Shown here in pieces: positions 11,301 through 30,917 of a stretch of 64,000 bases of DNA. Positions within the stretch are counted from its first letter, which is position 1. Each line of letters begins with the position of its first letter. A program made the position numbers and the translations under genes. The notes beneath the pieces were generated by a model. The model was not told the DNA's origin, did not search any database, and was given only the letters and a program-made list of their open reading frames with translations. The DNA is taken from positions 1 through 64,000 of IMG/VR virus record IMGVR_UViG_3300024520_000047; one strand, given 5' to 3'.

Positions 11301-14300
11301 GCATTTAAAAGGTCTGTTATATTCTCCTCTAAAACCTCCACTATCTCTTGTCGTACTTCCTCTTTCAACGCTTCATCTGGTTCATCACTAACGCGATTAG
11401 CACGTGTAAGGTCATCCTCTGACTCGTCCCGTACACTTCTACGTAAACCACATGTTCTACATTCTTCTTCATAGTCACCATCTGACCACCACTGGTGGTC
11501 ATGAAAAATGTCCCACAAAGTATAAGTGTCGTGTCCACCCAAAGCTAAATTGGCCATTCCACCACCATCTACTATTACAAATACCCCTATCTCATCCTCA
11601 ACACTCCACCCTCGTTCTTTCCGGACTTTCTTTTGGTCTACATTCCATGGTAGTTCTTTCTCATCAATAGAAGTAACTACATACTTAAAATCATATCCAC
11701 CATCCCAAACCTCCTGTATTCCTTTTAATTTTTCCTGAGCGACTTCGATGGCTTTCTCTCTCCCTCCATGCCATTCAACCAACCACTCATCTATTATCTT
11801 ATAAAGTCCTCTTTCTTTACGGGTATCTAATCCTAATAATTTAAGTATATGTGGGTCATTATGTGGTCCTTTATTATCCCAATAGTTAAAAAGTGATTCC
11901 TTAAAATGTGCATATATTTTTTTTAGCTGGTTGGGCGATTTCGCTGGGTTAATATTTGGAAAATCGGAGTCTTCATTAAACAACATTTTTTTATGCTCTT
12001 CTTCCTCTAATAATCCTTTAGTCAATGTTCTTTTTTTATCTTCATCAAGTCGGTCATTTTTTCCTGACGCCGTTATCTTACCTGCGTTACGTTTTTCTCT
12101 CCAAAAATTATCTACAACTATTTGGGCTTCATGCCATGTCAAACCCGCGATGTGGGTAATACTTCGTATTGCATCCGTGAACTGTCCTTCTCCAAAAGGA
12201 TAGTATTCATTAGGAACCACCGTAGGGAATTGGGTATCTAACCACTCATAAGCATTTTTAATATGTTCTTCCTTAGATAGGATATCCTCCAACAAGAGAT
12301 TTTGTACCCACTTAATGACAGTGGAATGCAAACTCATTCTTCCAAAAGGAGAACGGTCCCAGGGAATGTACCCATCTCCAGTATAGTCCCAGACATTAGA
12401 TTGACCTGTCCATTGGGGTATCCGCCTATTACTATATAAGATAAATTGAACTTCCTTTAGGAACTGTTTAATACTCGCATCACTAACTCCTCCCACCAGT
12501 TTTTCTCCATGTTCCTTTCCTAGAGTATAGAGGTTATATAATTTTAAAAATTTATCTTTGTAGTTATCATTTAAAAATTGAGTAATCTCTTCGTCAGTAC
12601 GTCTAGAAGAAGTGGATTCGGCTAAACCTTGATAGGTAACATCACTTATCTCACTATCTATTATCTCGTGTTCCCCGTAATCATAGGTATCCACTTCACC
12701 GTTCCAATCATAAAATTCATCACGACCTCTCTCATATGCATCATCTTCATCGAACGCCATAATCTCAACACTTCCTCTTCTATATTCAGTTTGGTCCACC
12801 GTTTCCTCATAGTCGACATTATACCATTTGGGTAACTCTTTGAAGGGAGCTTTTATTTTACTATAATCCCCTAAGTCTTCCGCGAAATCCCAATTATCAG
12901 AGGCCCATTTCGCATACTTGGAGGCGTCCACTCTCTGTTCCATCCCACGTGTACCGGGGCTGGTTTTGATACCAAATAATTTCATTAGGTCTACCCATCG
13001 TTTGGCTAACTGGTTACCCCCATAAGCAAAAGTATTAGTAGAAATATGGGATAACTCATTTCTGGTAAAGGTGGATTTAAGTGTATTTAATATTTTACTC
13101 TCTACGGGAGTAAAGGCACTTCTGTCCATTCCTTCTGCTTCTTCATCGGTCCAACTATCCTTATTTCTATCTTGTTCGGTAAGGGGTTGTTCTTTAATAA
13201 GTTTCTTAATCTCTTCTGCCAATCCTTTATACTCTGCACTGGTGGTCTCATGCTCAAATCTTTCAGAATCTCCATAATCATCTACATCAGTGTTACCACC
13301 CCAATCAAAGAATTCCCTGTTTCCTTTATTCAAGGCATCGTCTTCATCAAAGGCAATTAAATCTACATCTCCGCTTTTAAATTCTACTTGACTTACCGTT
13401 TCTTCATAATTTACATTATACCATTTGGGTAAGACTTTAATTGGTTTGGTTACCTTGGAATAATCCATTTCCCCATCCTCTCCTCTAATCTCCTCATCCC
13501 AATTGTCTAATGCCCATTTTGCGTATTTGGATGCTTCAGCTTTCGGTTCCATCTCTCCCCATCCCTCAGGCATCGTATGCCCGAATAACTTCATAGCATC
13601 TTTCCACCTCTTACCTATATTACCAGAATAAGGATATAAATCCGTACTTGTAGTTATTTGAATCAAGTCCTCTTTAGTAAAATTCTTTGCCAGAAAATTT
13701 AAAATAGCAATTTCTTTTTTGGTGAAAGGACTGTATGAAATGCCTTCGTCTTCTTCTTCCCATTGGTCATCTTCATGAACCTGTTCCTGCAGGGAAGTAC
13801 TTTCTTTACGTAGACTAAATGCTGTGGGGTCGGTTAAATTAGGCTCTTGTGGTTCGGGAATTTCTACATACCCACCAAATCCAACGAAAGCATCGGGTCT
13901 GTATTGTTGTGCAATATTTTCTAACCATTCATTTAATACATAAGGAACTGGTAATAAAACAGCATCTCTATTCCATTCTTTTCTATAATCTATTAATCCC
14001 AACTTAGTTAAACGATGGTCAAACTGAGTTAACTCGTGGTCAAATCCATCATACGGTGAACCGTGAGCATAAATCTCCTCATAGTCATCAGGGTCTTCTA
14101 TTCTTCCTGCCGCAATCTCCTCTGCTATTCCTTTGTAGAAAGATTCCAACTCTTCCAGATGGTTCTTGACGAATTTCTCCACTTCCGATTTTTCATGTCG
14201 GTCTAAATAGTGAATAAAAGTTTCTACAGGTACCTCCAATGCACGGTTGTTAGGTTCTGGGTTATGTTCGGGAGAATTTCTAAAGGATTGTGAATTGGGT

Positions 14301-14485: not shown

Positions 14486-15807
14486 TAAGAAGTATATTTA
14501 TCTAATGCCTCTTGTGCTTGACGGCCTCTTTTATTTTGGTTTACTCTACTTTGATTACTGGGTCTTTCAAAATTTACCATAAAAGAAGCGCCCGCATCTG
14601 ATGCATTGGTCGTTGTTAATAAAGCATTATATGCTTTTTTCTCTTTTCCTTGGAGTTCACTCCATAAATATTCTAATTGTGCGTCGGGGTCGGTAATAGG
14701 TTTTTGTTGTTTTTTCGCAAAGTCATTTAATCTATATAGTCTAGTGTCATGCCATTGTGCGAGCCCCATAGACGTTCCTCTGTCTCCAATAGTACCCGTC
14801 TTAAAATTAGACTCAGATTTCATATTACCCGCAATTCCCGCCGCTTGTTCGGGGGTCAAACCTTTATTAATAAAAAATTTAATGACGTGATTAGAATCTA
14901 TTTGTTGATTACCGGGGTATTTTTTCCCTTTCAAAGGTAATATAAAATTAGCGTCAGGTTCTATTACACCTTTTCTTTCTAATTTTTGTACTGTAGTGGG
15001 GTCATTTATCTCGGGATTGAGATTAATTTTCTTGGGGTCTTTCATCGCTCCCAACACATCAGGGGTTATCATATCAGTAATCTTAAAACCATAATCTTTC
15101 TGAAATGCATTCACCGCTGCTAAAGTTTCGGGACCAAATTTCCCATCTATGCCAAACTTAGGTAATATATAATTTCTCGCAATTAAATCTATTTGCATTT
15201 CTTTTACCTTATCCCTAACATTCCTTCTTCCCCTTCTCATTCCATCTGATAAAGTAAGATTACCTTGTGGTATATTTTGAATTTCTATTTTTTCTTTTGG
15301 TTTTCTTCCTATTCTTTTAATAGTTACACCATCTAAGTAAGGTACAGGGTCAGTAGTAGAACTCCCTTTAGCTTTATCATACACTTCATAATGTAGATGT
15401 GCTCCAGTAGATGAACCGGGACAGTAGTCTCTTTTTCCTCCTCCAGATAATCCAATAACTTGTCCTTTACTTACCGATTCACCTTTGTTAACCCGGATAT
15501 CTTTAATGTGACAATAACGTGTTTTCAATCCTGCACCATGGTCAATGTATATATTACCACCACACGCCCCCTTGGTACATTGAGCTTTAATAATCACACC
15601 ATCTGCTGGGGATAATACTTCGGTTCCACTTTTTGCGTTAATATCTACCCCATGGTGTTGTCTCGTTTTTTTAGTAATGGGATGCACTCTTATACCATAG
15701 GGACTGCTAATTTTAAGACGGCCAGCCAATGGTGGCCCTAAACTAACTTCTACCTCTTCATTTAATAGAATTCTATTTAATTGTTTTTCAGTTATTAATA
15801 TTTTCAT
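14485..15807 (-). CDS. M23 peptidase + peptidoglycan-binding domain + phage-tail-type lysozyme
   Basis: HHGVD (HxxxD) and HLH of M23; DGKFGPETLAAVNAFQ PG-binding; AAGIAGNMKSES...GLAQW tail-lysozyme motif; leader MKILITE...ILLNEE. Confidence 0.9.
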   Translation of the reverse strand: MKILITEKQLNRILLNEEVEVSLGPPLAGRLKISSPYGIRVHPITKKTRQHHGVDINAKSGTEVLSPADGVIIKAQCTKGACGGNIYIDHGAGLKTRYCHIKDIRVNKGESVSKGQVIGLSGGGKRDYCPGSSTGAHLHYEVYDKAKGSSTTDPVPYLDGVTIKRIGRKPKEKIEIQNIPQGNLTLSDGMRRGRRNVRDKVKEMQIDLIARNYILPKFGIDGKFGPETLAAVNAFQKDYGFKITDMITPDVLGAMKDPKKINLNPEINDPTTVQKLERKGVIEPDANFILPLKGKKYPGNQQIDSNHVIKFFINKGLTPEQAAGIAGNMKSESNFKTGTIGDRGTSMGLAQWHDTRLYRLNDFAKKQQKPITDPDAQLEYLWSELQGKEKKAYNALLTTTNASDAGASFMVNFERPSNQSRVNQNKRGRQAQEALDKYTS

Positions 15808-19062: not shown

Positions 19063-19066
19063 TTAT

Positions 19067-19430: not shown

Positions 19431-20000
19431 ATGAATCCCAACCGTATAAAATCTATCCGCCGCACCTATATTATATTTTCTATAATAGTAGGAATTGTTG
19501 CTCCTATTTTATGCTATTGGTTAATTCCTCATTTTGACATAAAACACGACCCTTTATCTAAATTTGGTATCTCCGAACCCACTTCCCATATCTGGTTAGT
19601 CTCATTAATGTTTATTGCCATTGGATTATGGTTAAATGGGGAATATCGGATTGGGGAAATGATTAAGAAAAAAAAATGGCGTCCTTTATTGAAGTGGTTA
19701 CTGAGAATTTCTACTTTTTCATTATTATTAATGGCAGTAATAGATATGAGTTGGCACTGGACACATAAAACTTTAGCTTTACTTTTTTTCTGTGGATATA
19801 ATGTTTTTGTGTTTGCCTTTGGTATTGTGCGTTCTTTAACTTATGTTAGAAGAGGAATGTTTTCAGTAATAATGGCTACGCTTATGTTATCCACATCTTT
19901 ATTAATTCTTCCATTTCCAAGTTATGGTGTTGCTGAAATATCATATATATTTCTGATAGTGCTGTGGAACACTAAAGTCTTATTTAGGAAAAAATTATAA
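19431..20000 (+). CDS. polytopic membrane protein (DUF998-like)
   Basis: ~6 hydrophobic helices; PLSKFG and H..LALLFF motifs resemble DUF998. Confidence 0.6.
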   Translation: MNPNRIKSIRRTYIIFSIIVGIVAPILCYWLIPHFDIKHDPLSKFGISEPTSHIWLVSLMFIAIGLWLNGEYRIGEMIKKKKWRPLLKWLLRISTFSLLLMAVIDMSWHWTHKTLALLFFCGYNVFVFAFGIVRSLTYVRRGMFSVIMATLMLSTSLLILPFPSYGVAEISYIFLIVLWNTKVLFRKKL

Positions 20001-23000
20001 GGTTTCTTTCCATAAATTTATTAATCGGTTAGCAGTTGGTATTATGTTGCGTTTGGCTTCTCTAAGAGTTACTTCTTTATTTTTATTTTTAAGAGAATGG
20101 ATGGTGGTATCCCAGATAAGGTTTTTAATTTTATCACCATCTTCACTTAAGAGTCCACTATCCTTTTTTAATACAGTAGAATAGGTATCAATCCAGTCTT
20201 TTCCACCAATTAAAAAGTGGGAATAAAAATTCTCATTTGTCATCTCTTTATTTTTAACTTCACTTAAAAAATCAAAAATTAGTTTTCTTTTTTCAACTAG
20301 TTGGGCTGTGGTTACGTGTTGGGAACGTACTTTAATAAAAGCAGTTAAATCCATTTTATCAAACGACTCAAAGAACCTCCTTTTTATTAAAAAATCCTTT
20401 TGGGCTGCTTGTAAATGTCTGTTAACCTCTTCTGTCATATCTCCACGCAACTTTCCTCCCATTGTAAGGGTGTAGTCCGACTTTTTCTCAAAGTCTCTTA
20501 AATCGAAGATATTAATTGTATCTCCAATTTGAAATGGGATATTACTTAGGTTACCACTCTTTGCAATATCAACTATTTTCCCAGTTGGTGTCATATAAAG
20601 TAAAAAGGTCTGAGAGTTTTTACCCCAACCACCTTTGTATTCAAATCTTCCAATGATTAATAATCGTCTAATATAATTAGGAATGTTAGGTCTTTCTTCT
20701 TCTGGTAATTGTGGAATAATGGCTTCCGTTAACGGAGTGTTCCTGATGATAATCCATTTATCTCTCCCTCCTCCATCATCAGCATAATAATCATAGTCTT
20801 CTACTCCTTGATATAATCCCAAGTGTCCATCGTAAGTATCTATCTCGTATTTAATTCCTCCTCTAAACATATCACCTCTCGGTTCTTCGGATGCATTGCC
20901 TTCATATACATGTACCACGATTCCTACAGTAGTATTGGGTATCGTCAGTGTTGTAGTTCCGGGAGGTGCGGGGTCCATTTCTAAGTCCCAAATAAAAATT
21001 TTATCTCCTACTTTAAGTGGTGGACTTATTTCCTCTTTGGGTATTTTGGTGGTATCGATTTTTTGTTCCTTTAAAGTATTGAAATGATAGGCATCCGTAA
21101 TCTCCCAATCATCCGATTCATAATCTCCATGCTCATAGGTATGCATTTCTCCGCCCCACCCATAAAAATCTTCCCTCGATTTCTCTTCCGCATCCGTTGC
21201 TCCAAACGCGGTGACGTTTGCGCTACCCCTTTTAAATACTTGTTCCCAACCACTTTCTTCTGCCTCTACTTCATATTCGGAGGGGTATTCTTTTCTTGCA
21301 TTTTTAATTTGTCCATAATCTCCATCGTCTGCTTCGTGTCTATTCTCTAGTGCCCAGCGTGCATATTTGCTTATTATTGTCCAGATTTGAGCACTTCCCT
21401 CTCCACTGTTGGGTTCACCAAATAGTTTCATTACATCCTCATATCTAGAAGTAACTTGCCGTTGTATATCAGTTTTAAAAGTTCTGGTGGCAATTGCTTT
21501 TAATTCATCGAACGTAAATTCTCTAACAATAGTATTTAATATTTTAACTTCGAGTGCGGTAAAAGGACCATACTCTACATATAAGTCATCATCCTCTAAT
21601 CCACTCTCGGCATCTTGTTCGTTCAATCTTCTGGATGTAATATTCTTGCCACTAGCATCAATTTCTTTTTGTCGTGCCTCTATCTCTTGGGGTATATTGG
21701 ATACATGTTTTTTCACCATAATCCACTTATCGTTAGTCGTAAGGATTCTATTTCCCCTATCCCATTCAATATTTTCTCCTGTTATTGGTAACATGTTCCA
21801 ATACAAATTACGGAAGGTGGGTTCATTTCCAAAAGTTATTTGTTCTGTATTCACGGGTTCGGGAGAAGTAACATAATAAGTCTCCATGATAGTAGGAAAA
21901 GTATCTTCCCCATGTAATTCACCTCTACTTCGCGTTCTATACATGCCAGAACCTGCAGATTGTTTATATCTGGTATCTTTATCTACATCTACCACTCTAA
22001 TAACGTCTCCAATATTTAAAGATGGATTAAGTTTTTCTTTCTGTTCAGTAATCGGTTTTTTATGAACCTTAATCCATTGGTATATCCAAGGGTATAATAG
22101 TTTTGCGGTACCTCTACCTACCATATAGTCCCCATTTAAATAATCTTGATGTTTGTCTGCTGGAAGAAGTGTATATCTCCAAGGCCACTGTGCTTTGTGC
22201 CCAGCAGACTCTTTTTCTACTACTATGTATGGTGTTAATATCTCAGGTCTTTCCGCTTCTCCTCGCCCTTTCATCCTCTCCCTCTCCCTGTCTATATCTA
22301 TTACTCGTATACTATCACCCACTTCTAACTCTGGACTTAATTGGGTTTCTTTTTGTTCTCTTAAAATATATGGTGTGTCACCACCCCATATTTCTACTTC
22401 CTTGCCTACCCCTTTATCATTTCCTTCCCACTCGCCTGTCAGTGCAACCAATTCCATGTTGTCTATCCTCTCTATTATTTGACGTGCCCAAGCTTTTACA
22501 ACAGGGTTGGGGGTTAATCCTCTTAAACGATTATAAGATATGAAATCTCTTTCATCTGGTGGACCAATATTCGTAGTATCAATTAATCCTAATTTATATA
22601 AATCTTCATTGATGGTACCCCATAAATCATATAATTCCATTTGAGCCGTTTCAATTTTATCCGCCAAAAGGCCTATCTCACCTCTTCCTCCTTCTCCTCC
22701 ACCGAATCCACCGTATTTAAAATTTCTTACTCCACCTTCAGTATATGAGTCCTCATAACTGGTGAGTAAAAGTTTAGCTGCTAGAGCTAATTTCTTATAT
22801 ATTCTGAAAACCTCTTGTGTATAATTCTGGTGTAAAAACTTCTTTAGGGGTAAATTCTCACTCTGTTCTTTTATGGTTTCCCGATGTGTAGTACTTTCTA
22901 TCTCCCACCCATCAGATTCCCAATCTCCATAATCATAGGTCTCCATCTCACCACCCCAGTCGTACCAATCAGCTGTAGCCCTATCAGTCACATCCTGTGA

Positions 23001-26000
23001 ACTAAATCCGGGTATATCAACAGAACCGTGTTTGAATATTTTTTCCCATCCGCTTTCTTCCGCCTCTACTTCAAAGTAAGAGGGATAAATTTTAACTGGA
23101 GTTTTAACCTGTGCATAATCTCTTTTTTCATCGACCTCACCTGCAGCTTCACCCCAGTTATCCACCGCCCATCTTGCATATTTGCTCGCTATTACCCAAT
23201 CCTCCATGGTACGAGCGGGTATCGAAAATAATTTCATTATATCATTATATCTCTCTTCTAAGGCACGGGGTAAATTAGCGGCATCACTCTCCCCAATCAT
23301 CTCTAAGTCCTCTGAGGTAAACTCTTGGGCTAACTTATTCAATAACTTGACTTCCATGTTGGTGAAGGGAGTAAAGTCATAGTATTGGTCGTCATCATAG
23401 AATCCTTTATCTTTACCAAATTCCATTTTTTCTTCGTCTAACTGTAAACCTCCACGGTCTATCTTGCTCAATGCATCTAAATTCCCAAAGGAAGGATGGT
23501 CGGTTATCTTATCTTTTTTACTTTGTCTCATTACATCCCATACTCTAGGCTTCATCTTCATGTGATTACTCACCATATACCCTATCTCTTCTGGGTCACC
23601 ACCTAAACTCTCAATGAATTCACTATACTCATTCACTAACTGGGTGGAAACTTTTTCATGACCATGTGCGGTAGGTTGTCCTGTTTTAGGATTTACACCT
23701 AATGTGGCTAACTTACCTAGGTCATGAAAATATGCTGACAAAATTAAATTTATATTCTCAGGTTGTTCAGCAAACGCTCGGTTGGTTACCGTAATAATAT
23801 GTTTAAGTACATTTCCTTCTGGATGCCATTCAGGATTTTGTTTGGCCTTCCATTGGTCCATTAATATTTGTTGTAATGGTCTGGGTGAAGCATTGTATAA
23901 TTCTTTAAAGTTAGTCACTGATTCCCCTAATAAATCGATGTCATCATCCCACATCCCTTTATTTTTCTCCACCAGAATCCATGTATCGGTGTCGGGCATT
24001 AGATATCTCATGATTGCCTTATTTGAAAGAACACCGGGGCGGTCGGGGTAAGACACATCTTTCATGGGTCTATTAATACCATACCAATATTGGTCCCGCT
24101 TGGGTGTAGTGGTAACCCTATAAGGGACAAACAGTTCAGGAACTTGGTCGGGTATTTCTCCTTCTTTATCTTTAACATCTATTACTATTATCTCATCTCC
24201 ACTTTCTAAGGGTGGGTTTACTTTTTGTTGGTCTATGTTCTCGGTGAGACTTGCTGGGTCTGTAGGTTTTGGTGGGCCGAAATTTCCCTCATCATCTTTT
24301 GCCGATGGTTCTTTACTTTGAGGGACCAATTCATACAAGTCATCATATAAGATGTCATTAAAATATTCTTCACTAATATCTGGGTACCAATAACCATCAA
24401 AGTATTTTCCATCTACCTCTAAGTGGTCTCCCCGTTTACCCTCATTATAGTCATCTCCTCGTCCAAACTCTTCTATCATAATCTCCCCAAAAAGTTGGTC
24501 TGGAGTAAGACGTGCCATGTCTCTCATTACATCTTCCAAAGGTCGACTAGCATAATCTTCATGAAACTGAAAGAAATCTGTATTATCCCAATCGTCATCA
24601 CTTATCCACCTTTTTAAGTCACTTTCTATTATCCACGAATAACTTCCATTATTATTATCTCTTACCCATTTTCCTGTTCCGTCGAACCAGTCCTCTATCT
24701 TATCCCGAATATCGTCAAAGATGGCACGTTTGGTTGCATCTTCCTGTTCTATACTATAGGCGCGGGTAATCTTATTTCTAATTTCATCTATCTCACTCTC
24801 TTTTTCGGCAGCAATATCATCCTCAAAATCATTGTCTACATGACCCTCCAATAGTCTGCCGGCCACTTCTTTATCTTTAATCCCAAGAATTTCCATAATC
24901 ATTTTCCAACTTCCATCATCGAGATTATCTAACATCCCCTCATAAAATTCGTTATGGTCATACCATCCATCCCAATCCCATGCGTCCTCACCACACAGAT
25001 ATTTCCGTATGAGTTCTTCATGATTGTCATCATCAAATAATCGAGCTAAATCATCACAATCCCATAATGATGTTACCGGAATGGGTGCTTGAGTATTCAT
25101 TATGTATCTTTTGAGTAACATGGTGACACCATCTCCTTGGATGCCTTGCATCCCTAACAGTTTAAGGTCTTCCCAACTTACCCCATCTTGGTCCCATTTT
25201 TTATAAAGATATTTAACTGCATTTTCAGGATAATCTTTCATTATCCATTCTTTGTCTTCATCTTCCATTACTGAATCAAAAGGCCATCCTCCATGAAATA
25301 AATCTAATTGTTGTTCTTCTTTAATAACTTCTACCGAAGTAGTATCGTTGAGGGTATCTCTGTCTGGATAAAGAGCATCATTAAGGAGTTCTAAGTGATA
25401 TTCCACCTCCGCATCGTGGTCTGCCCAATTAATAACCATACCCTCTTCATCAAAATCAAAATCACCTTCTAATTGGTACTCGGTGGTATCATAATATTGA
25501 CTCATTAATTCTACTGTCTCCTCATTTGCGTTCACGGTATCAGTTAACTCATCAATGGTATTAAGATATTCCAGTTCTACAGTACTCAAATATTCTGCTT
25601 GTAACTCTTCATAATAATACTGGTCTACATATTTATCTTCCATTTGGTCACAGTCACACTTTCCTTCATCTTTTTCATCCTCCGTACATTCCCTATACTC
25701 ATCTTTTTCATCATCATAAAACTCAGTCCACTGTATACATTCACAGTCCTCCTCACTTAATTCACCATAAAAATGACCCCCACTTTGGAGACACTCTTCT
25801 AATATTTCTTCTGACTCAGCCTCTTCAGCATAAAACTCTACAGTATAGTAATAGATATTCGGTAGAGGTTCCCATAATAAATTCGTTATATTCCAATCAC
25901 TAAAGCCCCCACCTTCTTTAATTATCAACCATAAGGTCGCAGCTATCTGTTTTCCATCACTACTACTAAAAATTCCCCCCACATCTAGATATTTCCGTAA

Positions 26001-27368
26001 AGTATTGTAAAAACTATCGAAGTGGTATAAACTTTCATTTAAACGATGAGCGGTTCTTATTAGAGAAATTATCTTTGGGGTTATCTCTCCCCCATCATTG
26101 TGAAATTCGTATTCTTCCTTTAAATATCTTTTAGGTGTGGTGTCTTTGGAATAAACCCATGTATAATTGCCGGGATACAAACTTTTGGGGTCTACATTTA
26201 ATTCGTAAAGAGTATCTAAAGTTATGTCATCCCAATTTTCAATTTTAATCCTTTCCTTCCCTACATCCTCATATTCTGTGGGGGTAAGAAGAGTATAGTA
26301 GGTGTTACGGTTTTCATCGACACTTACATTAACCACCATATAAGGGGTAAGTAATTCTGGTACGTCTTGCCACTCGATATCATCATCTCTATTATACCAT
26401 CCCATCTGACCTGCGTCCCACCTATATCCAGCATTCGCAGCGAGTTCCTCTAGACCACCACCTACTACATAACCCTGTGTTTCTAATACATCAGTTAGTT
26501 CTTCATCCGACAGGTAATGACTACGAAACCCTTTACGGTCAATAACCACTATCTTATCCCCTACTTCTAGTTTAGGGTTATGTCTCCATAATTGGTGTTG
26601 GTTTCTAATATTTTCTTCCTTTAGGGTTGGTGGTAGGGGGTCATTCGTTCCTAGGTCCAATAAAGCGTAATGACCATTCTTCATTCCCAAATTACTAATT
26701 CCTATATCCAACCATCGTCTTCCAGTTGCTTCAATTTCTTTACGAATATTAACAATGTCGTCATACACTTGTCGGCATTCGGGAGACCCATCTACTGGTG
26801 GGTGAATAAGAGCTTTTCCTGTAGGGTCCGAATAAAAATCTACATAAATAGGATTGTCTTCTCTACAACAACATCTAGTGAACATCTTTTCTTCAGGTGT
26901 GGTTGGGTGGGTTAGGAGTTCTAAAACAATAATATACGCTTGACTACTATCTGATGTATAATAAGGAGTCTTAAAAGGGGCGGTAGCAAATACATTTGCT
27001 ACATATTCATTTTGTTTACCTTTTAAACTTTGTGCTTGACGGTGTTCAGCTTCATCTCCAGTAATTTTAATTACTTTATCATCATCAAGAAGTGCAGCAA
27101 TACCATTTCCACCACTAATAATATCAATAACGTCACCTAAATTATTATCAGTAATGTAATCCTTTAAAACCTTCTTAGGGTCAGCACTAAATTTAACTTT
27201 TCCGTGTTCAGCGTCTATTATATATTCTTCCGTATCCGGTACATCAATAGACTGATAAATGTCTTTACGTAACTCAGGGTCATTTCTAAAAGACTGGTCT
27301 ATCGCAACCTGTAATCCCGGGTCTAATTGTTTGGGTGATTCTTGTAATATATTAGGAGATTGTCTCAT
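19995..27368 (-). CDS. giant acidic modular polyprotein P2 (2457 aa): protein-kinase-like, HD hydrolase, 5 A-repeats, 2 B-repeats, Cys-rich module; LxE linkers
   Basis: Kinase motifs SGGNG/VIK/DIGISN/DLG; HD motifs WHPEG...HDLGK...HGHE; repeats visible in translation. Confidence 0.9.
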   Translation of the reverse strand: MRQSPNILQESPKQLDPGLQVAIDQSFRNDPELRKDIYQSIDVPDTEEYIIDAEHGKVKFSADPKKVLKDYITDNNLGDVIDIISGGNGIAALLDDDKVIKITGDEAEHRQAQSLKGKQNEYVANVFATAPFKTPYYTSDSSQAYIIVLELLTHPTTPEEKMFTRCCCREDNPIYVDFYSDPTGKALIHPPVDGSPECRQVYDDIVNIRKEIEATGRRWLDIGISNLGMKNGHYALLDLGTNDPLPPTLKEENIRNQHQLWRHNPKLEVGDKIVVIDRKGFRSHYLSDEELTDVLETQGYVVGGGLEELAANAGYRWDAGQMGWYNRDDDIEWQDVPELLTPYMVVNVSVDENRNTYYTLLTPTEYEDVGKERIKIENWDDITLDTLYELNVDPKSLYPGNYTWVYSKDTTPKRYLKEEYEFHNDGGEITPKIISLIRTAHRLNESLYHFDSFYNTLRKYLDVGGIFSSSDGKQIAATLWLIIKEGGGFSDWNITNLLWEPLPNIYYYTVEFYAEEAESEEILEECLQSGGHFYGELSEEDCECIQWTEFYDDEKDEYRECTEDEKDEGKCDCDQMEDKYVDQYYYEELQAEYLSTVELEYLNTIDELTDTVNANEETVELMSQYYDTTEYQLEGDFDFDEEGMVINWADHDAEVEYHLELLNDALYPDRDTLNDTTSVEVIKEEQQLDLFHGGWPFDSVMEDEDKEWIMKDYPENAVKYLYKKWDQDGVSWEDLKLLGMQGIQGDGVTMLLKRYIMNTQAPIPVTSLWDCDDLARLFDDDNHEELIRKYLCGEDAWDWDGWYDHNEFYEGMLDNLDDGSWKMIMEILGIKDKEVAGRLLEGHVDNDFEDDIAAEKESEIDEIRNKITRAYSIEQEDATKRAIFDDIRDKIEDWFDGTGKWVRDNNNGSYSWIIESDLKRWISDDDWDNTDFFQFHEDYASRPLEDVMRDMARLTPDQLFGEIMIEEFGRGDDYNEGKRGDHLEVDGKYFDGYWYPDISEEYFNDILYDDLYELVPQSKEPSAKDDEGNFGPPKPTDPASLTENIDQQKVNPPLESGDEIIVIDVKDKEGEIPDQVPELFVPYRVTTTPKRDQYWYGINRPMKDVSYPDRPGVLSNKAIMRYLMPDTDTWILVEKNKGMWDDDIDLLGESVTNFKELYNASPRPLQQILMDQWKAKQNPEWHPEGNVLKHIITVTNRAFAEQPENINLILSAYFHDLGKLATLGVNPKTGQPTAHGHEKVSTQLVNEYSEFIESLGGDPEEIGYMVSNHMKMKPRVWDVMRQSKKDKITDHPSFGNLDALSKIDRGGLQLDEEKMEFGKDKGFYDDDQYYDFTPFTNMEVKLLNKLAQEFTSEDLEMIGESDAANLPRALEERYNDIMKLFSIPARTMEDWVIASKYARWAVDNWGEAAGEVDEKRDYAQVKTPVKIYPSYFEVEAEESGWEKIFKHGSVDIPGFSSQDVTDRATADWYDWGGEMETYDYGDWESDGWEIESTTHRETIKEQSENLPLKKFLHQNYTQEVFRIYKKLALAAKLLLTSYEDSYTEGGVRNFKYGGFGGGEGGRGEIGLLADKIETAQMELYDLWGTINEDLYKLGLIDTTNIGPPDERDFISYNRLRGLTPNPVVKAWARQIIERIDNMELVALTGEWEGNDKGVGKEVEIWGGDTPYILREQKETQLSPELEVGDSIRVIDIDRERERMKGRGEAERPEILTPYIVVEKESAGHKAQWPWRYTLLPADKHQDYLNGDYMVGRGTAKLLYPWIYQWIKVHKKPITEQKEKLNPSLNIGDVIRVVDVDKDTRYKQSAGSGMYRTRSRGELHGEDTFPTIMETYYVTSPEPVNTEQITFGNEPTFRNLYWNMLPITGENIEWDRGNRILTTNDKWIMVKKHVSNIPQEIEARQKEIDASGKNITSRRLNEQDAESGLEDDDLYVEYGPFTALEVKILNTIVREFTFDELKAIATRTFKTDIQRQVTSRYEDVMKLFGEPNSGEGSAQIWTIISKYARWALENRHEADDGDYGQIKNARKEYPSEYEVEAEESGWEQVFKRGSANVTAFGATDAEEKSREDFYGWGGEMHTYEHGDYESDDWEITDAYHFNTLKEQKIDTTKIPKEEISPPLKVGDKIFIWDLEMDPAPPGTTTLTIPNTTVGIVVHVYEGNASEEPRGDMFRGGIKYEIDTYDGHLGLYQGVEDYDYYADDGGGRDKWIIIRNTPLTEAIIPQLPEEERPNIPNYIRRLLIIGRFEYKGGWGKNSQTFLLYMTPTGKIVDIAKSGNLSNIPFQIGDTINIFDLRDFEKKSDYTLTMGGKLRGDMTEEVNRHLQAAQKDFLIKRRFFESFDKMDLTAFIKVRSQHVTTAQLVEKRKLIFDFLSEVKNKEMTNENFYSHFLIGGKDWIDTYSTVLKKDSGLLSEDGDKIKNLIWDTTIHSLKNKNKEVTLREAKRNIIPTANRLINLWKETL

Positions 27369-27941: not shown

Positions 27942-28496
27942 TTATTTTTCTAATCGTTGTTTAACAAAAGCCTCATTATTAAGTATGTTTTCCTTTTGCA
28001 GTTTCTTTAGGTCTTCTAGTTTACTTTTTCTATTTTCTTCTCCTTTTTTTAATTCTACAGCTTGACGTTTTTGTCGTTCAATAATTCCTTTTCTAATTTT
28101 TTCACGGTCTTGGTGTTGTAATATCTTATCAAATTGAGTTTCTAATTTATATATTTTGTCGCCTAAACTCTTTAACATAAACATACTATTCTTTATTAAC
28201 TCCACAATCTCTATTAAACTGGTTTCTTGGCTTGGGAGGGATTCAATGTATTTTATGTAATTAACCCCCTCTTCTGGACTGTTAAAGTCTCTATTAGGTA
28301 TAATATATTCTTTTCCAATAACAAAAGTGGGAAATACACCACTTCTAGTTAAAGATTTAATTATATCCCATTCTTCAGAATACTCTTTATAATCCCGTTC
28401 AATATATTGTATCTTTTCTTTATCCAGTTCTTCTTTCATTTTTTTACAATATGCACAACTAGTCATAGTGTACATTAATATTTGTTGTTTTTCCAT
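27942..28496 (-). CDS. glutaredoxin-like protein with C-terminal coiled coil
   Basis: CAYC active site, FPTFVIG cis-Pro loop. Confidence 0.8.
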   Translation of the reverse strand: MEKQQILMYTMTSCAYCKKMKEELDKEKIQYIERDYKEYSEEWDIIKSLTRSGVFPTFVIGKEYIIPNRDFNSPEEGVNYIKYIESLPSQETSLIEIVELIKNSMFMLKSLGDKIYKLETQFDKILQHQDREKIRKGIIERQKRQAVELKKGEENRKSKLEDLKKLQKENILNNEAFVKQRLEK

Positions 28497-28499
28497 AAT

Positions 28500-28925
28500 T
28501 TATTCTTTTATAATAGAAAATTTATTTCCTTGTTTTATTTTATTAATTATATCTACCCCCTCCGTTATGTGTCCAAAACATGTATGTTTACCATCCAAAT
28601 GTTTTGTGTGGTGTCTATTATAACATATAAAAAACTGTGACCCACCAGTATTTTTACCTGCATGTGCCATCGATAAGACACCGGTATTGTGGTATTGATT
28701 ATTACCATCCACCTCACAATCAATGCTATAACCTGGTCCCCCACTACCATCCCCATTAGGGCATCCACCTTGTATTACAAATTGGGGTATTACCCTATGG
28801 AATATTAAGTTAGTGTAGAACCCGTCATCCACCAATTTATTAAAATTCTTAGTGGTGCTGGGGGCACCCTCATTATACAAAGTCACATTCATTTCTCCAT
28901 GTTCAGTTATTATTTTTATTCCCAT
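28500..28925 (-). CDS. cyclophilin-type peptidyl-prolyl cis-trans isomerase
   Basis: FHRVIPQFVIQGG, LSMAHAGKNTGGSQFFI, HLDGKHTCFG. Confidence 0.95.
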   Translation of the reverse strand: MGIKIITEHGEMNVTLYNEGAPSTTKNFNKLVDDGFYTNLIFHRVIPQFVIQGGCPNGDGSGGPGYSIDCEVDGNNQYHNTGVLSMAHAGKNTGGSQFFICYNRHHTKHLDGKHTCFGHITEGVDIINKIKQGNKFSIIKE

Positions 28926-28932
28926 TATTAAC

Positions 28933-29394
28933 TTATTTAAATTTATTTACTGAATATGTGTATATTTTTTTAATAATAAATTTATACAATTTATAAAAAA
29001 TGTAAAAAATGGATATAAATAATATTCCTTGGAATATACCCATTATGAGTGGAATTACCAAATCTTTAAAATAAACAGTAGTGAAAACATTTGTATACGG
29101 TACATAGTGTTTATTTTTATAAAATTCTGCTAGTTCTTCTATAGTATCAATATACTCCGGTAAATTATTTGCCTTGACATCATCACAATTTACAAAATGT
29201 CCTCTATCCCATACGCCATACATAGTAAGTAAAGAAATAACCAATAGATATACCAAAATTAATTTACCTTTATTATTTGTAATGTAATTAACTATTCCTT
29301 TTGTCATTAATAAATTACCTAAAAATTCAGATACCCTATCTAAAGCTGAAACATATTCATCTATAATCCTATTATCTTTTGTAGATTTTGACAT
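28933..29394 (-). CDS. membrane protein
   Basis: Two hydrophobic segments. Confidence 0.6.
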   Translation of the reverse strand: MSKSTKDNRIIDEYVSALDRVSEFLGNLLMTKGIVNYITNNKGKLILVYLLVISLLTMYGVWDRGHFVNCDDVKANNLPEYIDTIEELAEFYKNKHYVPYTNVFTTVYFKDLVIPLIMGIFQGILFISIFYIFYKLYKFIIKKIYTYSVNKFK

Positions 29395-29410
29395 TAATAT
29401 ATTATTTTTT

Positions 29411-30019
29411 TTAATCTAAAATTTTATCCACCAACCCATATTCTAAACATTTTTCAGCATTCCACCATAAATCATGTTTTAAAATTTCCTCTAATTTAGA
29501 AACAGGAACTTTAGTATATTCTTTATATAACTTATTAATCATTTCCATTAACTTTTTATTATTTTCCATATCATCTACTAATTCACTATATTTTCCCCAT
29601 GACGAAGAGCTTAACTGATGTATTAACATATAGGAATGTCGATGTATCCACCTTTCCTTGCCCACTACACTAATCATTGTTCCTGCACTAGCCGCACACC
29701 CCTCAATAATTGTAATGACCTCACAAGAGGTATTTCTAATTGTGTCCAGTGTGGATAAACCCGCAAAAATACTTCCACCATATGAGTTAATGTGTAAATA
29801 AATATATGGTAATGGTATCCCCATAGAAAGAGAATGTTTTTGTAAGTGAATGTCTAACTCTCTAATTGCTTTATTAAGTTCCAACATTTTAGACCGTTCC
29901 ACTTCAGAATAAAAATATATATGGTTATCTATTGCTGTAATTTGATTGTTGTCATTATTAGAATCTAAATTATCAGATTTTGTTTTTTCTTTTGTTTTGC
30001 CCCAATATGGTTCTCTCAT
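29411..30019 (-). CDS. ClpP-family serine protease (divergent)
   Basis: INSYGGS, AASAG (Ser), LIHQ (His), HDLWW (Asp). Confidence 0.9.
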   Translation of the reverse strand: MREPYWGKTKEKTKSDNLDSNNDNNQITAIDNHIYFYSEVERSKMLELNKAIRELDIHLQKHSLSMGIPLPYIYLHINSYGGSIFAGLSTLDTIRNTSCEVITIIEGCAASAGTMISVVGKERWIHRHSYMLIHQLSSSSWGKYSELVDDMENNKKLMEMINKLYKEYTKVPVSKLEEILKHDLWWNAEKCLEYGLVDKILD

Positions 30020-30258
30020 AAATTTTCTAATTTAATTGTATATTCATTTATTGTTTGTAGCTTAACTGATGGGTAACAAACTTGCCCATAATTATAATGT
30101 GGTATTGTAATTGTTGTGGTATCATAATCTATAAAGCTATATTGTGGACATTGGTTACATGGTTTTGCTTTTTTAGTTGTAGAACACGAACCAAGTACCA
30201 TGGATAATACACACATAATAGTTCCTAAAATTAATAAAAATTTTAATAAATCTTTCAT
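30016..30258 (-). CDS. small lipoprotein
   Basis: Signal peptide with lipobox LGS-C. Confidence 0.65.
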   Translation of the reverse strand: MKDLLKFLLILGTIMCVLSMVLGSCSTTKKAKPCNQCPQYSFIDYDTTTITIPHYNYGQVCYPSVKLQTINEYTIKLENL

Positions 30259-30917
30259 TTTCTTTTTCCTATAATTTCATCTATTACACCATAGTCTAAT
30301 GCCGCTTCTGCGTCTAACCATAAATCTCTCTGGGCATCTTTCTCCACTCTTTTTGGTGTTTTACCACAACACTTTCCTAATATTTCAAAAAGAAGTTTAT
30401 TAGTTTTTTCCCATTCCTCCATAGTTATTCTAGCATCTTGTATATTTCCGATTGCCCCACCACTAGATTGGTGTAACATGGTCTGACTATACCTTAAAGA
30501 ATTTCTTTTACCCTTAGTACCTGCAGCCAATAATACGGACCCCATGGAAGCCGCCATACCGGTATTGACTGTTCTAATGTCACATTTAATATAATCCATA
30601 ACATCTATTATACCTAACCCCGCTTTAACAGAACCTCCCGGTGAATCAATATATAAAGTAATATCATCGTTATTTACAGTATCTAAAAACATAAGTTGGG
30701 ATTGTAAAACATGTCCAGTCATGGATGTAATCGGTCCAGCTACCCAAATAATTCTTTCCATCATCAATCTAGAAAAAATATCCATTTGTGTTACTCTCAA
30801 TTCTCTTTCTTCCAATATATAAGGTGTCATGCTATTTTCATACCCCTGTAAATCTCCCTTATTAACACCATAATGTTGGGTAGCATATTTCTGAAATTCT
30901 TTATAATCTATATTCAT
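30255..30917 (-). CDS. clpP: ATP-dependent Clp protease proteolytic subunit
   Basis: MDIFSRLMMERII, DSPGGSV, AASMG, MLHQ, RDLWL. Confidence 0.95.
   Translation of the reverse strand: MNIDYKEFQKYATQHYGVNKGDLQGYENSMTPYILEERELRVTQMDIFSRLMMERIIWVAGPITSMTGHVLQSQLMFLDTVNNDDITLYIDSPGGSVKAGLGIIDVMDYIKCDIRTVNTGMAASMGSVLLAAGTKGKRNSLRYSQTMLHQSSGGAIGNIQDARITMEEWEKTNKLLFEILGKCCGKTPKRVEKDAQRDLWLDAEAALDYGVIDEIIGKRK

What the first reader, a model, noticed from the sequence alone, without database searches (positions are those of the whole stretch)
26640..27140. Ser/Thr-kinase-like domain as first payload of P2
Seen: Gly loop ISGGNGIA, VIK lysine, helix-C Glu (EAEHRQA), catalytic loop DIGISN (D-x4-N) and DFG-like DLG, ending at linker TLKEE. 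Known: phage T7 gp0.7 kinase phosphorylates host proteins. Inference: an ejected kinase could modify host defence or translation proteins before any phage transcription.
Basis: partly seen in the sequence, partly recalled or inferred. Interest (0 to 1): 0.6.

Follow-up and report, generated by a model that had tools for sequence, protein, structure and literature searches.

The report
Minimal kinase heading giant phage protein
The flagged stretch encodes a stripped-down kinase with every catalytic residue intact. It is a distant cousin of the phage T7 kinase, sits at the front of a 2,457-residue multi-enzyme protein of a marine jumbo phage, and may be cut out and delivered into the host with the DNA, which is not shown.

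Summary
Observation confirmed. Window 26640-27140 (- strand) encodes residues 77-243 of a 2,457-aa ORF (19995-27368). Two AlphaFold models (pLDDT 76 and 82) have the protein-kinase-like fold; every listed top PDB match is a kinase-fold chain, nearly all protein kinases (best PKR, Z 10.5). The fold stops about 10 residues after the DLG motif, so the usual C-terminal lobe is missing.

No Pfam, NCBIfam or PHROG model detects the domain. A profile search still finds 641 cluster representatives. They are stand-alone proteins of 185-290 aa or modules at the N-terminal, internal or C-terminal position of giant proteins. The family profile matches the T7 gp0.7 kinase family (hhalign probability 94.8%, E 5e-8). 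The closest described kind is the C-lobe-less kinase of phage "polyvalent proteins" (Iyer 2017), but that Pfam model does not match.

"Ejected" is only inferred. The supports are a T4 gp21-type prohead protease in the genome, (L/I)xE motifs in disordered segments flanking the folded module (L8-Q9-E10 and L249-K250-E251), and the same motif recurring at module boundaries in both giant proteins. Substrate and packaging are untested. I rate it a new variant of a known kind.

The parts
19995..27368 (-). Giant ORF 'P2', 2,457 aa (P0001). It is a multi-module ('polyvalent'-type) protein.
   Evidence: Blocks are shuffled among homologues P0002, P0003, P0008, P0013, P0015, P0018 and P0019.
27339..27368 (-). 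Residues 1-10, ending I-L-Q-E10. Predicted disordered. Candidate T4-type N-terminal propeptide or capsid-targeting peptide (inferred).
   Evidence: pLDDT below 50 for residues 1-12. 16 of 18 relatives have [LIMV]xE just upstream of the module. T4 Alt is processed at ITE-6 and T4 targeting peptides are 10-20 aa (PMC5694885).
27144..27332 (-). Residues 13-75: conserved N-terminal subdomain (helices 17-26, 31-40 and 64-74), specific to the close subfamily.
   Evidence: D24 and P64 are invariant; D16, R28 and P31 are at least 90% conserved. pLDDT is 68-84.
26634..27143 (-). Residues 76-245: kinase core. It comprises the N-lobe strands b1-b5, helix aC, helices aD and aE, the catalytic loop, b7-b8 and the DLG motif. 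No canonical C-lobe follows.
   Evidence: secondary-structure order, pLDDT 85-96; listed top matches are kinase-fold chains; the aligned model range is about 62-250.
27096..27113 (-). Gly-rich loop G86-G-N-G-I-A91.
   Evidence: It aligns to the T7 kinase L-G-N-G-H-F-S-A-A loop.
27066..27068 (-). K101, the equivalent of the ATP-anchoring lysine (VAIK motif).
   Evidence: The only fully invariant residue in the distant set. It aligns to T7 K93.
27045..27047 (-). E108, the helix-C glutamate.
   Evidence: helix 106-115.
26775..26873 (-). Insert between aD and aE carrying invariant C166-C167-C168 and C198. This Cys cluster is subfamily-specific and its role is unknown.
   Evidence: It is absent from the wider family.
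26691..26708 (-). Catalytic loop D221-x4-N226, preceded by W219 where kinases usually have His.
   Evidence: It aligns with the TTK H-S-D-L-K-P-A-N loop and with T7 D195-N200. Invariant.
26649..26657 (-). D238-L-G240, the equivalent of the DFG motif.
   Evidence: It aligns with TTK D-F-G and T7 D213. D238 and G240 are invariant.
26613..26627 (-). Boundary motif T248-L-K-E251-E252, with E251 invariant. The disordered linker starts here. Candidate protease site after E251 (inferred).
   Evidence: pLDDT falls below 50 from residue 249. E251 is invariant in 19 sequences. The motif [TSPI][LI]xE[EQN] occurs 6 times in P2 and 7 times in P1, against about 1.5-1.8 expected.
26538..26579 (-). First copy of a small recurrent module (N-P-x-L-x-x-G-D-x-I-x-V-I-D), residues 264-277. 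It recurs 5 times in P2 and occurs in P1 and P0008.
23436..23843 (-). HD-domain phosphohydrolase module, residues 1176-1311, a later module of the same protein.
   Evidence: Pfam HD E 4.8e-4, just under its cut-off. phrog_6931 E 2e-6. tblastn hit to a gene annotated as tRNA nucleotidyltransferase, 36% identity.
5366..14485 (-). Second giant ORF 'P1', 3,039 aa. It shares the ~200-aa repeat, the small modules and the boundary motif with P2. It starts M-P-T-L-S-E6.
14485..15807 (-). 440-aa protein next to P1 with an M23 peptidase domain. Its C-terminal domain matches tape-measure, minor-head and endolysin PHROGs, as a virion-associated cell-wall hydrolase would.
27942..30917 (-). Upstream gene set conserved with a homologous locus: two ClpP-like proteases (29411-30019 and 30255-30917), small ORFs, and a thioredoxin-like gene (27942-28496).
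   Evidence: The same order (two ClpP genes, a peptidyl-prolyl isomerase (PPIase), a glutaredoxin, then the giant gene) is seen in L010.

Best explanation
Residues 13-248 of the giant protein form a self-contained minimal enzyme of the protein-kinase-like superfamily. It has an N-lobe with a Gly-rich loop, the ATP-anchoring K101 paired with the helix-C residue E108, a catalytic loop D221-x4-N226 and a Mg-binding D238-L-G. The fold ends right after that motif, so the activation segment and the C-lobe helices aF-aI are missing. A conserved 60-residue N-terminal subdomain is added. The module belongs to a large family found almost only in phages. No Pfam, NCBIfam or PHROG model covers it, and it is remotely homologous to the T7 gp0.7 kinase. 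The most likely activity is ATP-dependent phosphorylation of proteins with loose substrate specificity, as reported for T7K. The likely mode of use is inferred, not shown. In this model the giant protein is a capsid-packaged polyprotein. The phage's T4 gp21-type prohead protease cuts it after Glu in (L/I)xE motifs, at E10 and E251 for the kinase. This would release a kinase of about 27 kDa (S11-E251) that is ejected with the DNA and acts before any phage gene is expressed. Shown here: the fold, the catalytic residues, the family, modularity, the boundary motif, and the presence of the protease gene. Inferred: catalysis, protein substrates, cleavage, packaging and ejection.
For: Fold. Model 1 has pLDDT 76.4 and model 2 has pLDDT 82.0 and pTM 0.76, with the core at 85-96. 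Foldseek against PDB gives 148 matches at E<=1e-3, and the listed ones are protein kinases apart from two aminoglycoside phosphotransferase rows. The exhaustive VIA-align search gives ULK4 Z 9.3, BRAF 9.2 and PKR 9.0 at the top. The second look gives PKR Z 10.5, rmsd 3.9 A, 146 residues aligned, with model 64-247 on PKR 257-441, that is, up to the DFG motif. BFVD gives 83 matches at E<=1e-3, including T7-like 'protein kinase' entries. In the ESM Atlas the nearest shapes are viral clusters carrying Pkinase or Phage_T7_kinase.

Sequence. The catalytic residues are invariant. The family profile aligns D221, N226 and D238 to the TTK H-S-D-L-K-P-A-N and D-F-G motifs. hhalign against the T7 gp0.7 family gives probability 94.8%, E 5.4e-8 and 143 columns, with all four motifs in register.

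Family. 641 representatives match at E<=1e-3. A stand-alone 288-aa version occurs on 12 contigs. The kinase module sits at the N-terminal, internal or C-terminal position of giant proteins. Its partners include PPK2 with a peptidoglycan-binding domain, HD, DUF192, GNAT and 2H/Acb1-like domains.

Processing and packaging. The genome encodes a Peptidase_S77 (T4 gp21) protease at 82 bits, over the cut-off, with T4-like and cyanophage relatives. The disordered stretches 1-12 and 249-275 carry L-Q-E10 and L-K-E251. The boundary motif is enriched in P1 and P2 and flanks the module in most relatives. T4 Alt, an ejected enzyme, is cut at ITE-6 and LTE-619 (PMC5694885). T7K disarms host defences by promiscuous phosphorylation (PMC13645617). 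Kinases lacking the C-lobe were already predicted in injected polyvalent proteins (PMC5512222).
Against: No curated HMM recognises the domain: Pfam, NCBIfam and PHROGs were tried, and PF00069 and PF18762 find nothing in the genome at E<=10. Without a C-lobe the way a protein substrate would bind is unknown. Aminoglycoside phosphotransferases (Z 8.1) and the tRNA kinase ArkI (Z 8.2) score close to protein kinases, and distant family members touch the APH and ABC1 models.

The packaging evidence is indirect. No MuF, portal or other virion-anchor domain was found. The gene lies among non-structural genes (ClpP, thioredoxin, thymidylate synthase) and about 186 kb from the protease gene. The loose N-terminal (L/I)xE pattern occurs in 43 of 233 ORFs. 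In the subgroup with a C-terminal kinase the invariant Glu sits in T-L-E or N-L-E rather than L-x-E, so E251 could instead be a structural remnant of the activation segment. P1' would be E, Q or N, not the small residues that I recall follow the cut in T4 substrates (from memory; not checked here). No cultured relative exists, so there is no virion proteomics, and no RNA data were found.
Confidence: 0.6

Rival explanations
1. The module is an active kinase but is never packaged. The giant protein is made after infection and works in the cytoplasm, whole or processed by the adjacent ClpP-like proteases, as an expressed multi-enzyme counter-defence or host-takeover factor like T7 gp0.7.
For: T7K is an expressed early protein, not a virion protein. 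The gene sits in a long minus-strand block with ClpP-like, thioredoxin and thymidylate-synthase genes. The order ClpP, ClpP, PPIase, Grx, giant gene is conserved in L010. No virion-anchor domain was detected. A stand-alone version lies among small non-structural genes.
Against: The recurrent (L/I)xE[EQN] boundary motif fits the specificity of the gp21-type protease that the genome encodes. A peptidoglycan-binding domain inside homologue P0003 and the M23 wall hydrolase beside P1 make most sense for proteins that cross the envelope at entry. Both giants start with a short peptide ending in LxE.
Confidence: 0.3
2. The module phosphorylates something other than protein, such as a nucleotide or second messenger, RNA or tRNA, or a small molecule. 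The other modules of these giants (HD, PPK2, 2H phosphoesterase) point towards nucleotide or RNA chemistry.
For: The substrate-binding C-lobe is absent. ArkI tRNA kinase (Z 8.2), APH(4) (Z 8.1) and Rio2 (Z 7.4) are within about 1 Z unit of the best protein kinases. Distant relatives touch the APH and ABC1 models. Neighbouring modules are HD, PPK2 and 2H/Acb1-like.
Against: The only sequence-level links are to protein kinases: TTK, CDKL5, RSK and others, Pkinase at 1.8e-5 for one member, and the T7K family at 94.8% probability. The top Foldseek matches are eukaryotic-type protein kinases.
Confidence: 0.15
3. The module is a pseudokinase that binds nucleotide or serves as a structural or targeting scaffold for the giant protein, without catalysis.
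For: The unusual W219 replaces the His or Tyr of the H/Y-R-D motif. There is no activation segment. The module is often at a terminus of the giant proteins.
Against: All five catalytic positions (K101, E108, D221, N226, D238) are invariant or at least 90% conserved, down to 19-30% identity in the stand-alone set of 26 drawn from a family of 641 cluster representatives. Pseudokinases typically lose at least one of them. Stand-alone versions exist.
Confidence: 0.05

Closest known systems
Phage T7 protein kinase gp0.7 (T7K; Pfam PF27024 Phage_T7_kinase)
   Same: It is a phage-specific compact kinase. The family profiles align at hhalign probability 94.8%, E 5.4e-8, over the Gly loop, V-I-K, D-x4-N and the DFG-equivalent Asp. 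In that alignment the core ends a few residues after the DFG-equivalent Asp in both families. T7-like kinases are among the best viral fold matches. T7K is a promiscuous dual-specificity kinase that disarms host defences (PMC13645617), which is the function proposed here.
   Different: A single T7 sequence shows no detectable similarity, and the precomputed Pfam column for the homologues lacks PF27024. The motif here is D-L-G, not T7K's D-P-V. There is no C-terminal shut-off or DNA-binding domain. This module has an extra N-terminal subdomain and a CCC...C insert. It is fused to the front of a 2,457-aa protein in a T4-like jumbo phage, rather than being an early gene of a 40-kb podovirus.
Kinase-PolyVal (Pfam PF18762), the kinase of phage and plasmid polyvalent proteins (Iyer et al. 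2017, PMC5512222)
   Same: The concept and anatomy match: a Ser/Thr/Tyr-type kinase that has lost the whole C-terminal subdomain but keeps the active site. It is embedded in giant multi-domain phage proteins predicted to be injected, with stand-alone versions in Bacteroidetes phages. The architecture and domain shuffling seen here fit that description.
   Different: The PF18762 model does not match this protein or genome, and only one distant relative touches it, at E 0.018. The listed hallmarks are a Glu before strand 2, a Gln in the last N-lobe strand and an insert between the catalytic His and Asp. None is seen: the sequence reads G-G-N-G-I-A, then L-E-L-L, then W-L-D with no insert.
T4 Alt and the internal proteins IPI-III (capsid-packaged, gp21-processed, ejected proteins)
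   Same: These are host-modifying enzymes or proteins carried in a T4-type head. They are targeted by a 6-20-residue N-terminal peptide and trimmed by gp21 after Glu in I/L-x-E; Alt is cut at ITE-6 and LTE-619. This phage has a gp21-type protease. P2 and P1 begin with peptides ending L-Q-E10 and L-S-E6.
   Different: There is no sequence or fold relation. Alt is an ADP-ribosyltransferase. Here many modules would be released from one polyprotein of 2,457 aa (P1: 3,039 aa). Packaging is unproven.
Eukaryotic-type protein kinases, with PKR, TTK/Mps1 and ULK4 as the best structural matches
   Same: The N-lobe, helix C, catalytic loop and DFG region superpose (PKR Z 10.5, 146 residues, rmsd 3.9 A). 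The catalytic residues are in register.
   Different: Only about the first 185 residues of the roughly 260-290-residue kinase chains listed in the fold searches are matched. The activation segment, P+1 loop and helices aF-aI are absent. Sequence identity is 11-19%.

Membership tests
Protein-kinase-like (PKL) fold superfamily | Five-stranded N-lobe sheet with helix C, followed by helix E, the catalytic loop, strands b7-b8 and the metal-binding loop. | tested here: met
   The order of secondary-structure elements matches. Every listed match is a kinase-fold chain (protein kinases, a few pseudokinases, aminoglycoside phosphotransferases, Rio2). Best match Z 10.5.
Protein-kinase-like (PKL) fold superfamily | Catalytic residues: Gly-rich loop, b3 Lys, helix-C Glu, D-x4-N and the DFG Asp. 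| tested here: met
   G86-A91, K101, E108, D221, N226 and D238 are conserved. They align in register with TTK and T7K.
Protein-kinase-like (PKL) fold superfamily | Phosphotransfer activity. | not testable with these tools
   This needs a biochemical assay.
Pfam Pkinase (PF00069), canonical Hanks-type kinases | HMM match above the gathering score, and a complete C-lobe (activation segment, APE motif, aF-aI). | tested here: not met
   There is no match at E<=1 for residues 1-260 or at E<=10 in the genome. The fold ends at residue 248. One distant relative reaches 1.8e-5.
Kinase-PolyVal (PF18762) | HMM match. | tested here: not met
   searches find no match. Only one distant relative reaches E 0.018.
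Kinase-PolyVal (PF18762) | [quoted passage not shown] | tested here: met
   the definition is taken from PMC5512222.
Kinase-PolyVal (PF18762) | Clade hallmarks: a Glu before strand 2, a Gln in the last N-lobe strand, and an insert between the catalytic His and Asp. | tested here: not met
   By inspection of the sequence and of alignment A7, none is present. The authors' own alignment was not available, so the positional mapping is approximate.
Phage_T7_kinase (PF27024) | HMM match. | not testable with these tools
   The model is not in the local Pfam copy. Indirectly, the precomputed Pfam column shows PF27024 for T7 relatives but not for P0002-P0012.
Phage_T7_kinase (PF27024) | Profile-level homology of the kinase core. 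| tested here: met
   hhalign of A5 against A6 gives probability 94.8%, E 5.4e-8 and 143 columns.
Phage_T7_kinase (PF27024) | D-P-V motif in place of DFG, and a C-terminal shut-off or DNA-binding domain. | tested here: not met
   The motif is D-L-G. The hhalign match ends at T7 residue 219, and what follows here is a different module.
Polyvalent protein (Iyer 2017) | Two to fifteen unrelated conflict-type domains in one phage polypeptide, with combinatorial shuffling among relatives. | tested here: met
   P2 carries kinase and HD modules plus repeats. Homologues carry PPK2, a peptidoglycan-binding domain, DUF192, GNAT and 2H/Acb1-like domains.
Polyvalent protein (Iyer 2017) | Link to the virion or injection apparatus (a virion-anchor domain such as MuF, or proteomic detection). 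| tested here: inconclusive
   No such domain was found. The only hints are indirect: the peptidoglycan-binding domain in P0003, the M23 hydrolase neighbour and the LxE motifs.
T4-type packaged and ejected head protein (Alt/IP-like) | A gp21-family prohead protease is encoded by the phage. | tested here: met
   PF03420 scores 82.4 bits at G000:C1:213609-214082. tblastn links it to T4-like and cyanophage proteases.
T4-type packaged and ejected head protein (Alt/IP-like) | A short N-terminal targeting peptide ending in (L/I)xE, and processing after Glu. | tested here: inconclusive
   The sequence fits (I-L-Q-E10; pLDDT below 50 for residues 1-12). The loose pattern is common, however (43 of 233 ORFs), and cleavage cannot be tested here.
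T4-type packaged and ejected head protein (Alt/IP-like) | Presence in purified virions and entry into the host. | not testable with these tools
   No cultured relative exists.

The most novel reading that the evidence does not exclude
The two giant proteins of this marine jumbo phage are capsid-loaded polyproteins. The T4-type prohead protease cuts them at T-L-x-E-[EQ] boundaries into a set of ready-made enzymes. The first of these is a T7K-like promiscuous mini-kinase that enters the cell with the DNA and phosphorylates host defence and nucleic-acid-binding proteins before any phage gene is transcribed. That would be a pre-packaged version of the anti-defence strategy recently shown for the expressed T7 kinase.
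Probability: 0.3. Interest if true: 0.75.

Novelty: new variant of a known kind. Interest (0 to 1): 0.55.

Why it matters
Promiscuous phosphorylation by the T7 kinase was recently shown to be a broad anti-defence weapon (PMC13645617). This work finds a much larger, unannotated family of related mini-kinases: 641 clusters at 50% identity, whose nearest ESM Atlas neighbours are viral clusters. Members are stand-alone or built into giant modular proteins of uncultured marine jumbo phages. If the module is cut out and ejected with the DNA, it would act before transcription. That closes the window in which an expressed kinase is still absent, and it would give the first concrete, testable example of an injected kinase of the kind predicted for polyvalent proteins in 2017. 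The domain is also a natural minimal kinase (about 170-residue core, no C-lobe), which makes it useful for asking what the smallest active kinase is. If it is only a cytoplasmic domain, it remains a useful annotation for several hundred protein clusters that carry no family annotation.

Tried and rejected
- **Family scans of residues 1-262.** Pfam, NCBIfam and PHROGs gave nothing usable. The best was phrog_4301 at E 0.019 and Vps16_N at E 0.27, which I treat as noise.
- **PDB sequence search with the narrow profile A2.** Only chance hits at E above 0.6. The wider profile A5 was needed.
- **hhalign of A2 against the single T7 gp0.7 sequence.** Probability 1%. This was superseded by the family-against-family comparison.
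- **Searches against cultured phages.** Megablast of the gene and tblastn of the kinase found no match. tblastn of the whole protein found only the HD module.
- **Direct membership tests.** PF00069 and PF18762 found nothing in the genome. PF27024 is not in the library.
- **Timing of expression.** The sigma-70 and terminator scan upstream of the gene was at background, with the two terminator-like hits on the strand opposite the gene. The T4 late-promoter word TATAAATA occurs 17 times against 16 expected. Nothing can be said about early or late transcription.
- **Sequencing runs.** Only DNA holders were found (seawater and marine), with no RNA runs.
- **The conserved block at residues 400-1050.** The ESM Atlas feature search (680-1030) and the PDB sequence search (400-1050) both returned nothing.
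- **P0010 (366 aa)** was rejected as a stand-alone form. It comes from a low-coverage long-read contig whose genes are fragmented.
- **Genetic code.** Only the standard bacterial code was used. The ORF is open under it.


Full report
**1. What is at the coordinates**

Window 26640-27140 lies on the minus strand inside a single ORF, 19995..27368, of 2,457 aa (P0001). The flagged range is residues 77-243. The window is the first 64 kb of a 245,874-bp IMG/VR virus record, estimated 77% complete. The same protein is also seen on a 293-kb contig. The DNA occurs in seawater and marine metagenomes from several independent studies. No RNA run holds it.

- I84-S-G-G-N-G-I-A91
- V99-I-K101
- E106-A-E108
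- D221-I-G-I-S-N226
- D238-L-G240
- T248-L-K-E-E252 (coordinates)

**2. Is it more than chance?**

Yes. A word search with residues 1-260 found eight giant proteins (1,425-2,340 aa) at 37-49% identity. The isolated domain found three shorter ones. One of these, P0012 (288 aa, 63% identity), is a complete stand-alone gene on 12 contigs, flanked by unrelated small genes.

In a 19-sequence alignment (30-70% identity), G86, G87, K101, D221, N226, D238 and G240 are invariant. N88, G89, A91, V99 and E108 are at least 90% conserved.

A profile search of 1.84 billion representatives gave 641 proteins at E<=1e-3 and 138 at E<=1e-10. In 26 stand-alone members at only 19-30% identity to the query, the lysine is the single invariant residue. 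The Gly loop, E108, D221, N226 and D238 are at least 90% conserved.

**3. Fold**

The first AlphaFold2 model used 8 sequences and has pLDDT 76.4. The second used 19 sequences and has pLDDT 82.0 and pTM 0.76. Both show the same order of elements: b1 - Gly loop - b2 - b3 (K101) - helix C (E108) - b4 - b5 - aD - insert - aE - catalytic loop - b7 - b8 - DLG.

| Search | Main result |
|---|---|
| Foldseek, PDB | 148 matches at E<=1e-3; listed rows are protein kinases (AAK1, BMPR2, JNK3, PERK, PKR) plus two APH(2'') rows |
| VIA-align, 48,161 representative chains | ULK4 Z 9.3, BRAF 9.2, PKR 9.0 |
| VIA-align second look, better model | PKR Z 10.5, rmsd 3.9 A, 146 residues; model 64-247 on PKR 257-441 |
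| Foldseek, BFVD | 83 matches at E<=1e-3; small uncharacterised phage proteins and T7-like 'protein kinase' entries |
| ESM Atlas, by shape | nearest are viral clusters carrying Pkinase or PF27024 Phage_T7_kinase |

The PKR alignment covers only the N-lobe through the DFG region. Confident structure ends at residue 248, and residues 1-12 and 249-275 have pLDDT below 50. The canonical activation segment and helices aF-aI are therefore missing. The stand-alone homologue confirms this, since it ends about 30 residues after DLG.

**4. Sequence-level links**

No curated model sees the domain. Pfam, NCBIfam and PHROGs found nothing. PF00069 and PF18762 found nothing in the whole genome at E<=10.

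The wider family profile A5 hits PDB sequences that are almost all protein kinases, though weakly (TTK at E 0.0045 and upward). That alignment places the family's catalytic loop and D-L-G on TTK H-S-D-L-K-P-A-N and D-F-G. One member reaches Pkinase at 1.8e-5 and one touches Kinase-PolyVal at 0.018. Distant giant relatives touch the APH, ABC1 and Pkinase models at the catalytic loop.

Against a 12-sequence alignment of the T7 gp0.7 family, hhalign gives probability 94.8%, E 5.4e-8 and 143 columns. It aligns:
- the Gly loops
- V-I-K with T7 K93
- D221..N226 with T7 D195..N200
- D238 with T7 D213

It is not family membership. The motif here is D-L-G rather than D-P-V, there is no shut-off domain, and the precomputed Pfam column for the homologues lacks PF27024.

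**5. Context: a modular giant protein**

P2 also carries an HD module at residues 1176-1311. It has two copies of a repeat of about 200 aa and five copies of a small G-D-x-I-x-V-I-D module. Both are shared with the neighbouring 3,039-aa ORF P1.

Homologous giants reuse the same blocks in different orders. They place the kinase module at the N-terminus, after a 200-aa leader, or at the C-terminus. They combine it with PPK2 plus a peptidoglycan-binding domain, HD, DUF192, GNAT or 2H/Acb1-like modules.

This is the 'polyvalent protein' architecture of Iyer et al. 2017. They described a kinase clade in such proteins that 'lost the entire C-terminal subdomain' while keeping the active site, with stand-alone versions in Bacteroidetes phages (PMC5512222). 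The present family is the same kind of thing. It fails that clade's HMM and lacks the hallmarks listed for it, so I treat it as a separate, T7K-related lineage.

**6. Is it a 'payload' that is cut out and ejected?**

The indirect evidence is as follows.
- The genome encodes a T4 gp21-type prohead protease: PF03420 at 82 bits, with T4-like and cyanophage relatives at up to 48% identity.
- In T4, gp21 cuts after Glu in I/L-x-E. Packaged proteins carry targeting propeptides of 10-20 residues, and the ejected enzyme Alt is cut at ITE-6 and LTE-619 (PMC5694885).
- The folded kinase module (13-248) is bracketed by disordered segments carrying L8-Q9-E10 and L249-K250-E251. E251 is invariant in all 19 relatives, although the spacer before it varies from 8 to 20 residues.
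- The motif [TSPI][LI]xE[EQN] occurs 6 times in P2 (1.5 expected; 3 of 500 shuffles reach it) and 7 times in P1 (1.8 expected; 1 of 500). In most cases it sits 8-20 residues before a recurrent module.
- 16 of 18 relatives have [LIMV]xE directly upstream of the module, wherever the module sits in the protein.
- P1 begins M-P-T-L-S-E6. The gene next to P1 encodes an M23 peptidase fused to a domain that matches tape-measure and minor-head PHROGs.

There are counter-arguments.
- No virion-anchor domain was found.
- The neighbouring genes are non-structural.
- The loose N-terminal pattern is common (43 of 233 ORFs).
- In the subgroup with a C-terminal kinase, the invariant Glu sits in T-L-E or N-L-E and is followed by a conserved 17-residue tail. 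E251 could therefore be a structural remnant of the activation segment.
- The two ClpP-like genes upstream, in synteny with a homologous locus, are an alternative source of processing.

I put packaging and ejection at roughly 40-50%.

**7. Mechanism proposed**

The module is an ATP-dependent phosphotransferase. K101 and E108 would position ATP, D238 would bind Mg, and D221 and N226 would carry out catalysis. With no activation loop it would be constitutively 'on', and with no peptide-binding lobe it would probably have low substrate selectivity. T7K behaves this way: it is reported as hyperpromiscuous, dual-specificity and able to disarm retron, DarTG and other defences (PMC13645617).

The N-terminal subdomain (13-75) and the invariant C166-C167-C168/C198 insert are unique to the close subfamily, and I cannot explain them. 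Non-protein substrates remain possible, because ArkI tRNA kinase (Z 8.2) and APH(4) (Z 8.1) score close to protein kinases.

**8. Verdict**

Fold, catalytic set, modularity and the T7K relationship hold. Ser/Thr specificity, ejection and targets are not shown.
- Novelty: a new variant of a known kind. It is a large, unannotated phage mini-kinase family, set in giant modular proteins of marine T4-like jumbo phages, with a conserved Glu-containing boundary motif.

Noticed in passing
window 5366-14485 (-) and 19995-27368 (-): The two giant ORFs (3,039 and 2,457 aa) share a repeat of about 200 aa (P2 1331-1530 and 1908-2093; P1 251-435 and 454-656). They also share several copies of a small module, N-P-x-L-x-x-G-D-x-I-x-V-I-D, each preceded by T-L-x-E-[EQ]. 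The folds of these modules are unknown.
   Followed up: partly
window 27942-30917 (-); L010 1345-4056: Two ClpP-like protease genes, small ORFs and a thioredoxin/glutaredoxin-like gene lie directly upstream of the giant gene. The homologous locus of P0003 has the same order (two ClpP genes, a peptidyl-prolyl isomerase (PPIase), a glutaredoxin, then the giant gene). This may be a proteostasis or processing set dedicated to the giant protein.
   Followed up: partly
window 48736-49317 (+), 49333-49860 (+), 54399-55541 (-); genome 184852-185214 (+): Four otherwise unannotated proteins share an N-terminal leader, M-[KR]-L-x3-L-[SH]-x-[LI]-[IVL]-x-E. It resembles a T4-type capsid-targeting propeptide ending in a Glu cleavage site.
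   Followed up: no
window 26775-26873 (-): The invariant triple cysteine C166-C167-C168 plus C198 sits in the aD-aE insert of the close kinase subfamily and is absent from the wider family. It could be a metal site or a redox switch. A thioredoxin-like gene lies two genes upstream.
   Followed up: no
window 23436-23843 (-): The HD phosphohydrolase module inside P2 (residues 1176-1311) has its best cultured-phage hit in a gene annotated as tRNA nucleotidyltransferase of a 309-kb Tunturiibacter phage (36% identity). It is 72% identical to the HD block of P0002.
   Followed up: partly
window 18991-19063 (-): A tRNA-Gly gene lies between the two giant genes. ARAGORN reports the anticodon as ACC, which I believe is unusual for Gly.
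   Followed up: no
homologues P0003, P0027, P0024 and P0030 (not in the window): Relatives of the giant protein combine the kinase with PPK2 (polyphosphate kinase 2) plus a peptidoglycan-binding domain, with GNAT plus a 2H/Acb1-like (anti-CBASS-type) phosphoesterase, or with several matched kinase stretches in one chain (3-6 per chain).
   Followed up: partly
L009 1660-5067: A 1,135-aa gene with a Por_Secre_tail (type IX secretion sorting) domain lies near the homologous giant gene on a 230-kb contig. This hints at a Bacteroidota host for this phage group.
   Followed up: no
genome G000:C1:134924-141454 (-): A third giant ORF (2,176 aa) lies outside the window. It was not examined.
   Followed up: no
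window 1590-2657 (-) and 39222-40655 (-): A thymidylate synthase gene (phrog_160, E 1e-111) and a 477-aa protein matching phrog_850 'RNA-binding protein' (E 2e-149) lie in the same minus-strand block. These are ordinary jumbo-phage metabolic and RNA genes.
   Followed up: no
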